Part shown: piece after piece, positions 17,846 to 20,184 of the stretch
How positions within the stretch are numbered: position 1 is the stretch's first letter
Layout of the letters: each line of letters starts with the position of its first letter
The notes under the pieces: model-generated
Databases searched by the model: none
What the model was told of the DNA's origin: nothing
Seen by the model: only the letters and a program-made list of their open reading frames with translations
Translations under genes and position numbers: made by a program
Source: Pavona decussata
Taxonomy: Eukaryota
Direction of reading: 5' to 3'
DNA length: 64,000 nucleotides
Assembly (NCBI GenBank): GCA_977016875.1
Contig: CDRNST010000013.1
Span: 620,001-684,000, forward strand

Positions 17846-18219
17846 CTCGAAAACAAGACACGTTTTCAGAGATAAAAGGAATGTTTAAAGAGATCTAAGA
17901 TGCCCTTGAAGTAAATAATGAAAAGAAAAGGGTGAAAGAGATTATTAAGTGTGTTATTTGCCAATCCACATGTACTGCATCACTGTATTTTTGTGTTGCT
18001 GGTTGTGGCCAATTAATTAGGTGCTTCTACTGTGCCTCCAGATTGCAAGACTGCCCCCTACGTAGGGTGAGTTTGCCAGATTCAGAAATTCACAAGCCAC
18101 TTAAGATAGGTGGCCTGGCAGAATTCTTGGGTACTGCTGATGTTTCCATGACATCAGCACTGAGGGAAGCCAGAATTGGTGCAAACAATGACGGAGATGG
18201 GGATGACAAAATCCTCTAA
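17846..18219 (+). pseudogene. RING-finger-like exon, degenerate
   Basis: CVIC..x..CVAGCGQLIRCFYC....DCPLRR; acceptor ATAG at ~17845; in-frame stop; candidate first exon MASVKMYGRYPTGTKNAHVITFPAK at 17361-17436. Confidence 0.6.
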
Positions 18220-18452
18220 TGCAAATCCTCTAATGCAGCATAAGCTGTTCATGTTTTCACTTTTCTGCTTTGTAGTGTTGTTGACATTAATGTAATTTAA
18301 CTGTCTTTCACAGTAGAATATCAAAGTTTGTTTCTATTAATGTTATGATTTAACAGTACAACGTACATGTATATTCCCATTTGGGAAATAACCTAGCAGT
18401 ATGCAGGATGTTTGTCCCATGAACCTAGTTTAATGGCCTTAGCTCCAACGAG

Positions 18453-18525
18453 TCTCCTGTAGCTCAGTGGTAGAGAATCCGAACTAGTAATCGGAAGGTC
18501 TTAGGTTCGACTCCTGATAGGAGAA
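18453..18525 (+). tRNA. tRNA-Thr(AGT)-like sequence within the repeat, D-stem mismatch (pseudo-tRNA)
   Basis: A box TAGCTCAGTGG, B box GGTTCGACTCC; D-stem 3' side GAGA instead of GAGC. Confidence 0.55.
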
Positions 18526-18711
18526 CTCGGATTTCTTTTTTCTGAGTATGCCTGCGTCACTTTCCAGAATAATCATCATTCTCATTCATTCACCAGGCTG
18601 GAAATATACCATCACATTTCTTTCACATACCACACGTTCGACATTCAAATCCTAGCAGTATGCAGGATGTTTGTCCCATGAACCTAGTTTAATGGCCTTA
18701 GCTCCCACGAG

Positions 18712-18784
18712 TCTCCTGTAGCTCAGTGGTAGAGCATCCGAACTAGTAATCGGAAGGTCTTAGGTTCGACTCCTGATAGGAGAA
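18712..18784 (+). tRNA. tRNA-Thr(AGT)-like cloverleaf with 8-nt anticodon loop, within the repeat
   Basis: TCTCCTG/TAGGAGA acceptor, GCTC/GAGC D-stem, TCCGA-ACTAGTAA-TCGGA, TTAGG-TTCGACT-CCTGA; T-run downstream. Confidence 0.65.
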
Positions 18785-19578
18785 CTCGGATTTCTTTTTT
18801 CCGAGTATGCCTGCGTCACTTTCCAGAATAATCATCATTCTCATTCATTCACCAGGCTGGAAATATACCATCACATTTCTTTCATACAACCTCTACACCT
18901 GTTACTAAGTTAATATGTTTAAATGCCTCAGGCCTGCCATTTATTGTTATTGAAGGTAAATCAAGAAGACTACTTTCTTTTTTTTTTTTTCACGTTGTTT
19001 TATTATTTATTTGCACTGTTTATAACACTATATATTATACATACATATGGGCATACACTGTATTTACTTCTTACACGATGCTTACTCTATGTTAACGTAC
19101 ACTACTTACAATACATATATTACAATACAATTACACTAGTCAAATTAAATTACAGTTGATCTGTTTACAATGACATTATTGTTCGTTTGTTAATTATTCG
19201 AGTCACTTATAAGAATTTTGTTTGTTACTACATAGGGTGTTAATTTTCTAGAATTCAATAGAATATTAAATAAATAGGTAGCGAAAGCAAACAAATCAAA
19301 ATCCAAAAGCTTAAAAGAAAAAAAAGACACAATACAATTTTATAAAGACAGAAAAAATTTCCATTTGTTTCTGAATTCTTGCTCCTTATTAGAAGTGACA
19401 GCAATATATTTTTCCAGATTGATTTTTTCGCACACAAGTGAGACAAACTCATCGAATTGAGACAGCTTATACATTTAGTTTCTAATGAAAAGATAGACGG
19501 GGTATCCAAGAAATAACGAGAATAGTTGTCTTAGACATATGCTCACAGTGCGGTTGAAATTTATAACAAGGCTTGATA

Positions 19579-20184
19579 CAGTTAAACCTCTCCACAACGG
19601 CCACCTTGGGGACAGAAGAAAGTGGCCATTGTTGAGAGGTGGCCGTTATGGGGAGGTGGGGGTGTAATATGACACCTTTTTTTTTTGGGAAGTACAACAT
19701 GTTTATTGTGCCAAGTTCATGCTTACTGTAGCCTATAATGACAATCCAATCTTAAATAATATATATAGATAAAAAAACACAATAAAACGTAAATAATCTT
19801 TTGAATCAAAATGTTAAACGGAAAGACGAAACGAGCAAGGTTCGGTATATTATTGTAGACAATTTATGCTTACTGCAGCATATAAATGGCAAACAATTAA
19901 AATACGTATATCATTAAAATGGATACAGAAACGTAATTTTCCGAAGACAAATGTCGAATACTGCATCAGTTTATAGAAAACGGTTTTTACACATGCAAAA
20001 GAACTGTATACTGGCCGTTGTCGAGAGGTTATTTTAGCAGTTGGGGACGCGCTTTAGTGGCCGTTGCCGTTGTAGAGAGGTTTAAACAAGAGCTAATGTA
20101 TGGACTGTCCGCCAGGCCAAAAAAAGTGGCCGTTATAGAGAGGTGGCCGTTGTGGAGAGGTGACCGTTAGTGGAGGTTCAACTG
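19579..20184. mobile_element. Tc1/mariner (pogo-like) MITE with TA TSD
   Basis: TA|CAGTTAAACCTC ... GAGGTTCAACTG|TA; repeated GAGAGGTGGCCGTT subterminal motifs. Confidence 0.9.

What the first reader, a model, noticed from the sequence alone, without database searches (positions are those of the whole stretch)
18392..18886. 259-bp tandem repeat with a tRNA in the middle, not at the 5' end as in SINEs
Seen: 1.9 near-identical head-to-tail units inserted in unrelated sequence. Each has ~60 bp before the tRNA cloverleaf and ~125 bp after it, with no poly(A)/simple-repeat tail and no evident TSD. A Pol III transcript starting at the tRNA could not copy the upstream 60 bp in a single pass. Inference: a permuted multimer fits spread through a circular or concatemeric RNA, like retrozymes or Penelope-mobilised repeats, but with tRNA processing in place of a hammerhead (I found no hammerhead core in the unit). 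DNA-level rolling-circle amplification is an alternative.
Basis: partly seen in the sequence, partly recalled or inferred. Interest (0 to 1): 0.7.

Follow-up and report, generated by a model that had tools for sequence, protein, structure and literature searches.

The report
tRNA-bearing tandem retroelement, Penelope-type insertion
The 259-bp repeat is one copy of a young, high-copy, non-coding jumping element of this coral genome whose insertions carry the marks left by Penelope-like retrotransposons, but which holds a tRNA-like gene where related elements ("retrozymes") hold a self-cutting hammerhead RNA.

Summary
Window 18392-18886 has 1.9 head-to-tail units of 259 bp. Each unit carries a cloverleaf tRNA-like sequence with 61 bp before it and 124 bp after it. 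There is no ribozyme, no A-tail and no target-site duplication (TSD) at this copy.

It is neither a local duplication nor an ordinary SINE. The unit is dispersed (about 2,300 candidate sites, copies about 99% like their consensus).

In 40 independent insertions:
- 57 of 63 arms end at one of two fixed 3' sites, unit position ~193 or ~234, which defines a 41-bp "tail".
- 5' ends fall all around the unit.
- 22 insertions have two head-to-head arms. In 20 of 20 readable cases one arm is short-ended and the other long-ended.
- 19 of those 20 are flanked by an 11-16 bp duplication.

[quoted passage not shown] Variants are nearly all-or-none across the units and arms of an insertion, which points to repeated copying of one unit-length template.

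Still untested: RNA circles, tRNA-type processing, and which PLE is the partner.

The scan had already reached this reading on other copies (s1-501635, s1-493687).

Verdict: new variant of a known kind.

The parts
18392..18886 (+). Whole insertion: a single-armed array of 1.9 units. The 5' end is at unit position 1 and the 3' end is at the long start site (unit position ~234-236). No TSD.
18392..18650 (+). Unit 1 (full, 259 bp; 97.7% identical to the family consensus)
18651..18886 (+). Unit 2 (unit positions 1-236; 99.2% identical to the consensus). It ends where reverse transcription is inferred to have started.
18453..18526 (+). tRNA-like cloverleaf 1 with an 8-nt anticodon loop. A box at 18460-18470, B box at 18504-18514.
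18712..18785 (+). tRNA-like cloverleaf 2. A box at 18719-18729, B box at 18763-18773.
18526..18546 (+). Stable hairpin whose loop holds the T6 run (18536-18541), a Pol III terminator-like signal. Its twin is at 18785-18805.
18572..18584 (+). Short 3'-end site (unit position 193, ...ATCATCATTCTCA|). It is internal in this copy. Its twin ends at 18843.
18585..18625 (+). 41-bp 'tail' between the two 3'-end sites (unit positions 194-234). Its twin at 18844-18884 forms the actual 3' end of this insertion.
   Evidence: PMC11167929

Best explanation
This is a non-autonomous retroelement mobilised in trans by a Penelope-like element (PLE). It is the structural equivalent of an animal non-LTR retrozyme, but it has no hammerhead and carries a tRNA-like module.

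Shown by the sequences:
- Each insertion is a ready-made multimer.
- Its 3' end lies at one of two sites 41 bp apart.
- Its 5' end is random.
- Many insertions have two head-to-head arms, always one with the tail and one without.
- The whole structure is bounded by a TSD of variable length.

Inferred mechanism:
- A sense-strand RNA (tRNA sense) is the template. It is probably not made by Pol III, because every unit has a T6 run before the start sites.
- A PLE RT/GIY-YIG enzyme cuts both target strands and primes cDNA on both.
- One cDNA starts at the short site and the other at the long site of the same RNA species.
- The two 5'-truncated cDNAs are then joined in the middle.
- The template behaves as a single unit copied over and over, either by rolling-circle reverse transcription on a unit-length circle or by repeated template jumps.

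The tRNA-like module sits 58 and 99 nt upstream of the two start sites. This is about where the hammerhead sits in the anole PLE PAc. Its role is not shown. It could serve in RNA processing, RNA folding or stability, or a Pol III/TFIIIC function.
For: Dispersal: the unit gives 2,297 first-look candidates and 161 scored matches at 93-100% identity on many contigs. Copies are about 99% like the consensus.

3' ends: 57 of 63 arms end at unit positions 188-202 (30 arms) or 234-239 (27 arms).

5' ends: they occupy all 13 bins of the unit.

Two-armed insertions: 22 of 40 insertions are head-to-head. All 20 readable ones pair one short end with one long end (P about 9e-7 if the ends were independent). 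Of these 20, 19 have an 11-16 bp direct repeat, against a control mean below 1 bp.

One template per insertion: both arms share private variants, for example 148A/208C in 4 of 4 units and 114A in 4 of 4. Segregating variants are fixed within an array 38 times and partial 11 times.

Published PLE signature:
- Partial tandems, an inverted 5'-truncated copy, and a 30-40 bp tail at one end only (PMC8557442, PMC3846280).
- Two adjacent internal RT start sites that define the tail, with both target strands cut and extended (PMC11167929).

Internal control: PLE family A of this genome has RVT_1 and GIY-YIG domains. It has a short end, a long end about 85 bp further on, and short+long inverted pairs in 6 of 6 cases.

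PLE abundance: there are 933 GIY-YIG candidates in the genome.
Against: - No autonomous partner was identified. The only PLE family that could be read shows no sequence similarity to the unit.
- No RNA data could be obtained, so the template, its strand, its length and any circularity are all inferred.
- 18 of 40 insertions are single-armed, and most of those, including the window copy, have no clear TSD.
- 6 of 63 arm ends are non-canonical.
- Eleven block-wise partial variants show that pure copying of one monomer is not the whole story.
- Homogeneous arrays could also come from DNA-level unequal exchange.
- The small hairpins at the two start sites are thermodynamically weak.
Confidence: 0.82

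Rival explanations
1. An ordinary tRNA-derived SINE moved by a LINE, later amplified locally into tandems.
For: It has a tRNA-like sequence with perfect A and B boxes. It is short, non-coding and high-copy.
Against: - The tRNA is internal: 61 bp precede it.
- A T6 terminator lies 10 nt after it, before the 3' end sites.
- There is no A-rich or microsatellite tail.
- Multimers are the rule and are bounded by one TSD.
- Head-to-head arms and two alternative 3' ends are present.
Confidence: 0.03
2. A DNA transposon of foldback or MITE type whose inverted ends are built of 259-bp repeats, or a Helitron/HINE-carried satellite.
For: Inverted two-armed structures bounded by TSDs are seen in 22 of 40 insertions.
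Against: - 18 of 40 copies have only one arm.
- The inner junctions fall at random unit positions.
- The two outer ends always differ by 41 bp.
- TSD length varies from 8 to 16 bp instead of being fixed.
- There are no Helitron termini.
Confidence: 0.05
3. A Penelope-type passenger as in the best explanation, but the template is a long linear transcript of an existing array and no circle or monomer reiteration is involved. Array homogeneity would come from unequal exchange at the DNA level.
For: The authors of the anole PAc work propose a multi-copy mRNA as the template, and hammerhead cleavage was not needed in vitro (PMC11167929). Block-wise partial variants in L065, L070, L067 and L074 fit duplication of neighbouring units or a heterogeneous template.
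Against: Several lineage variants (175T, 248T, 215T, 182A, 231C, 164T) and private ones occur on all 3-6 units and on both inverted arms of young arrays. A mutation in one unit of a linear master cannot reach that state without a single-unit stage.
Confidence: 0.3

Closest known systems
Animal non-LTR retrozymes (Cervera & de la Pena 2020, PMC7229834; preprint 10.64898/2026.07.22.740005)
   Same: - Non-coding units of 170-400 bp in short dispersed tandem arrays.
- Low GC (43% here).
- TSDs longer than 4 bp.
- Found in corals.
- Thought to be passengers of PLEs and to use a unit-length RNA.
   Different: There is no hammerhead or any other Rfam ribozyme; a tRNA-like cloverleaf is present instead. 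The unit does not fold into a rod: the 185-nt spacer has z = -0.05. Circular RNA was not tested.
Penelope-like elements (Penelope/Poseidon type; PAc of Anolis, PMC11167929; PMC8557442; PMC3846280)
   Same: - Partial tandems.
- Inverted 5'-truncated arm.
- Tail at one end only.
- Variable TSDs, AT-rich targets, two internal RT start sites.
- An RNA-cleavage-type module about 60-100 nt upstream of the start sites.
   Different: There is no ORF. The unit is 259 bp instead of about 3 kb. A tRNA-like module stands where the hammerhead would be. The tail is 41 bp, against about 85 bp in the PLE family read in this genome.
Sm-alpha / Sj-alpha SINE-like elements of Schistosoma
   Same: Tandem and dispersed repeats of about 335 bp that tRNA finders call as tRNA pseudogenes (2,342 tRNA-Gln hits, PMC2770079). 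This is a precedent for a tRNA-related part in a retrozyme-like element.
   Different: Sm-alpha also carries an active type I hammerhead (PMC2770079, PMC8490949). The coral unit has none.
Non-autonomous Chlamys PLEs such as MRC1 of Chlamydomonas (PMC8557442)
   Same: Non-coding PLE passengers that form pLTRs and multicopy head-to-tail insertions without a canonical hammerhead.
   Different: They share 3' sequence with their autonomous partners and have no reported tRNA-like part. No partner was found here.

Membership tests
PLE-type insertion (mobilised by a Penelope-like element) | Partial or multiple head-to-tail copies with random 5' truncation | tested here: met
   Arms span 0.2-5.8 units. 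5' ends fall in all 13 bins of the unit.
PLE-type insertion (mobilised by a Penelope-like element) | Adjacent inverted 5'-truncated copy (head-to-head) | tested here: met
   Seen in 22 of 40 insertions.
PLE-type insertion (mobilised by a Penelope-like element) | Tail of about 30-40 bp, present at one end only, which implies two RT start sites | tested here: met
   3' ends lie at ~193 (30 arms) or ~234 (27 arms). 20 of 20 two-armed insertions pair one of each.
PLE-type insertion (mobilised by a Penelope-like element) | TSD of variable length | tested here: met
   19 of 20 canonical two-armed insertions have an 11-16 bp repeat that includes 1-3 nt of microhomology. It is absent at the window copy.
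PLE-type insertion (mobilised by a Penelope-like element) | 3' sequence shared with an autonomous RT+GIY-YIG element of the same genome | tested here: inconclusive
   PLE family A shows no similarity. Other families (933 GIY-YIG candidates) could not be fetched.
Non-LTR retrozyme | Type I hammerhead ribozyme in each unit | tested here: not met
   No Rfam ribozyme at E<=10 and no CUGANGA core. The same Rfam model does find hammerheads elsewhere in this genome.
Non-LTR retrozyme | Unit-length circular RNA | not testable with these tools
Non-LTR retrozyme | Short dispersed tandem arrays of a non-coding unit of 170-400 bp with low GC | tested here: met
   (GC 0.43)
tRNA-derived SINE | tRNA-related head at the 5' end that drives Pol III through the whole element | tested here: not met
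   61 bp precede the tRNA. A T6 run lies 10 nt after it, upstream of both 3' end sites.
tRNA-derived SINE | LINE-type 3' tail (A-rich or simple repeat) | tested here: not met
   Ends are ...TTCTCA| or ...CTTTCA| with no tail.

The most novel reading that the evidence does not exclude
The tRNA-like module is a working replacement for the hammerhead. Host tRNA-processing enzymes would cut multimeric transcripts to unit length. The unit RNA would be closed into a circle (or reused by template jumping) and copied round and round by a Penelope-like RT. Protein-dependent tRNA processing would thus have taken over the role of a self-cleaving ribozyme in a retrozyme life cycle.
Probability: 0.2. Interest if true: 0.85.

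Novelty: new variant of a known kind. Interest (0 to 1): 0.62.

Why it matters
Retrozymes and Penelope-like elements are defined in part by their hammerheads, yet the role of the hammerhead in transposition is unknown. In vitro it was dispensable for the anole element (PMC11167929).

Here a young family of about 2,300 copies thrives without any ribozyme, carries a tRNA-like fold at the equivalent place, and lives in a genome that also has hammerhead-bearing repeats. That makes it a natural experiment on what that module does.

The family is also a clean, short reporter of PLE integration. The strict pairing of one short end with one long end (20 of 20, and 6 of 6 in a true PLE) and the shared variants in both arms constrain models of how the two target strands are primed.

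For annotation, these arrays will be miscalled as tRNA pseudogenes, SINEs or satellites.

Tried and rejected
Nothing about expression, RNA ends or circles could be tested.

2. Partner search.
- Thirty GIY-YIG loci turned out to be one PLE family with no similarity to the unit.
- tblastn of the family A protein against all held DNA found no other PLE.
- Unit sites and GIY-YIG sites listed are not neighbours, apart from L031, which is an ordinary insertion about 460 bp beyond a PLE end.

3. The 87% tRNA-like match in L045 looked like a PLE pLTR. It lies outside the PLE end and next to an LTR-element LTR, so it was dropped.

4. A rod-like fold as in retrozyme circles was not found.

5. Hairpins at the two start sites are present but weak, at -0.9 and -1.2 kcal/mol.

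6. An empty-site paralogue for the window copy was not found.

7. An apparent excess of 5' ends at unit position 1 was mostly an artefact of BLAST not reporting short extensions.

8. The Ferbeyre 1998 paper on Sm-alpha is not held.

9. Cross-species comparison was not possible, because no animal genome collection is on hand.

Full report
**1. The observation**

Tandem Repeats Finder reports window 18392-18884 as 1.9 copies of a 259-bp unit with 98% matches and a score of 965. Alignment to the family consensus carries the array to 18886.

ARAGORN and Rfam both call a tRNA-like cloverleaf at 18453-18526 and at 18712-18785 on the + strand. The Rfam scores are 48.8 and 56.1 bits against a gathering score of 29.

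The cloverleaf has textbook A and B boxes (TAGCTCAGTGG and GGTTCGACTCC) but an 8-nt anticodon loop.

Each unit has 61 bp before the tRNA and 124 bp after it. Ten nucleotides after the tRNA a T6 run sits in the loop of a stable hairpin (-8 kcal/mol, z = -3.75).

No Rfam ribozyme matches at E<=10 on either strand, and the CUGANGA hammerhead core is absent.

This copy has no A-tail and no target-site duplication. Its left flank is unique in the genome. Its right flank is unique for about 90 bp before an unrelated repeat begins.

**2. What the family looks like**

The unit is not a local duplication. A search of the window's own 602-Mb genome gave 2,297 first-look candidates. It also gave 161 scored matches at 93-100% identity on many contigs. 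Earlier notes of this scan call the genome a stony coral.

Forty-seven full units differ from their consensus by about 1%, so the family is young.

I read 40 independent insertions. L029 and L061 are the same structure on two contigs and were counted once.

- **3' ends.** Of 63 arms, 30 end at unit positions 188-202 (mode 193/194...ATCATCATTCTCA|). Another 27 end at 234-239 (mode 234...CACATTTCTTTCA|). Six end elsewhere.
- **5' ends.** They fall in all 13 twenty-base bins of the unit.
- **Arm length.** Arms are 0.2 to 5.8 units long.
- **Two-armed insertions.** Twenty-two insertions consist of two arms in opposite orientation. Their 5' ends meet in the middle and their 3' ends face outward.
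- **End pairing.** In all 20 two-armed insertions with both outer ends readable, one arm ends at the short site and the other at the long site. Two like ends never occur together (P about 9e-7 if the ends were independent).
- **TSDs.** Nineteen of those 20 are bounded by an 11-16 bp direct repeat. Shifted controls average below 1 bp. The repeats are AT-rich and include 1-3 nt shared with the element's terminal CA or TG.
- **Single-armed insertions.** There are 18, including the window copy. They end at either site and mostly lack a clear TSD.

**3. What this matches**

The literature describes exactly this set of marks for Penelope-like elements (PLEs):
- partial tandems;
- an adjacent inverted 5'-truncated copy;
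- a 30-40 bp "tail" often present at only one end;
- TSDs of 8-10 bp (PMC8557442; PMC3846280).

Work with the purified anole element PAc showed that the tail is the stretch between two adjacent internal start sites of reverse transcription. It also showed that the enzyme cuts and extends both target strands at AT-rich sites (PMC11167929).

The genome gives an internal control. A GIY-YIG search found 933 candidates. The 30 best belong to one family with RVT_1 followed by GIY-YIG. This family has a short 3' end (...TTCTTTTATCA|T) and a long end about 85 bp further on (...CTTGGACTTGAC|). In 6 of 6 inverted pairs one end is short and the other long.

The 259-bp unit therefore inserts the way true PLEs of this genome insert. 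That family shares no sequence with the unit.

**4. The template**

The fixed ends lie on the 3' side in tRNA sense, so the inferred template RNA is tRNA-sense.

It must run through several units, each of which contains a T6 run. A Pol III transcript of the tRNA-like gene would stop before either start site. The template is therefore probably not the Pol III product. This is inference.

Within insertions, variants are nearly all-or-none. Lineage variants (175T, 248T, 215T, 182A) and private ones (114A, 148A/208C, 200T, 45A, 231G) occur on every unit and on both arms. Where three or more units cover a position, variants are fixed 38 times and partial 11 times.

Both arms therefore copy the same RNA species.

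A mutation in one unit can reach all 4-6 units of a descendant array only through a single-unit stage. That stage could be rolling-circle reverse transcription on a unit-length circle or repeated template jumps on a unit-length RNA.

The 11 partial variants lie in blocks of neighbouring units. DNA-level unequal exchange could also homogenise arrays.

**5. The tRNA-like module**

It lies 58 and 99 nt upstream of the two start sites. In PAc the hammerhead cut site lies about 85-92 nt upstream of the start sites (PMC11167929), so the positions are comparable.

5' ends are depleted inside the tRNA (8 observed, 18 expected, P = 0.002). They are enriched in the 23 nt just 3' of it (13 observed, 5.6 expected, P = 0.003). 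These bins were chosen after seeing the data.

This would fit an RT that stalls at a folded tRNA plus hairpin. It would also fit templates partly cut at the tRNA 3' end. Either way it hints that the module is folded in the template.

Whether it acts in processing is untested. RNase P and RNase Z leave 5'-phosphate and 3'-OH ends (established knowledge). RtcB, the ligase that circularises retrozyme RNA (PMC7229834), does not use such ends. A simple functional swap for the hammerhead is therefore not a given.

The same genome holds canonical type I hammerheads, some in inverted pairs 280-500 bp apart. Ribozyme-bearing and tRNA-bearing designs therefore coexist, and the hammerhead model's silence on this unit is meaningful.

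**6. Comparison with known elements, and novelty**

The closest known kinds are:
- animal non-LTR retrozymes, which are coral tandem repeats with hammerheads, now argued to be PLE passengers (PMC7229834; preprint 10.64898/2026.07.22.740005);
- non-autonomous Chlamys PLEs such as MRC1 (PMC8557442);
- Sm-alpha of Schistosoma, which carries both a tRNA-related part and a hammerhead (PMC2770079).

Six full-text searches found no report of a ribozyme-free, tRNA-bearing PLE passenger. I therefore class it as a new variant of a known kind.

It fails membership of retrozymes on the defining hammerhead. It fails membership of SINEs on head position, terminator and tail.

Two earlier follow-ups of this scan reached the same reading on other copies of this family or a 250-bp sister family (s1-501635, s1-493687). 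They are not independent evidence. My own counts agree with them.

**7. Limits**

- There is no RNA evidence.
- No partner was identified.
- The sample is 40 of about 2,300 sites, chosen as the best full-length matches.
- There was no cross-species comparison.

Noticed in passing
L031-L060 (for example L045:726-2053; L058:1-1809): A young autonomous Penelope-like family (RVT_1 plus C-terminal GIY-YIG) with a short 3' end at ...TTCTTTTATCA|T and a long end about 85 bp further on. Inverted pairs always combine one short and one long end (6 of 6). Rfam finds no hammerhead in the parts held.
   Followed up: partly
L045:2401-2700 and its paired genomic matches 5.2-5.6 kb apart: A ~300-bp repeat that occurs in direct pairs about 5.3 kb apart on many contigs, most likely the LTRs of an LTR retrotransposon. 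In L045 it starts 8 bp after a solitary tRNA-like copy (L045:2296-2392) that is 87% identical to unit positions 63-158.
   Followed up: partly
L029 (contig C379) and L061 (contig C207): The same two-armed insertion, with the same inner junction and ends, appears on two contigs in mirror orientation. This is probably a haplotig or a segmental duplication in the assembly.
   Followed up: no
window 18975-19386: An unrelated repeat family (20 candidates, 78-98% identity) begins at a long T run about 90 bp downstream of the array. It could be a minus-strand retroposon with an A-tail.
   Followed up: partly
genome places listed (for example C8:760893-761422, C44:356323-356649, C47:1929663-1929998): Canonical type I hammerhead motifs over the Rfam threshold occur in inverted pairs 280-500 bp apart. 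This suggests that hammerhead-bearing retrozyme-like repeats insert head-to-head in the same genome.
   Followed up: no
window 18209-18237 and 20126-20169: Two small tandem repeats: 14 bp x 2.1 copies and 17 bp x 2.6 copies, near the array. No link to it was seen.
   Followed up: no
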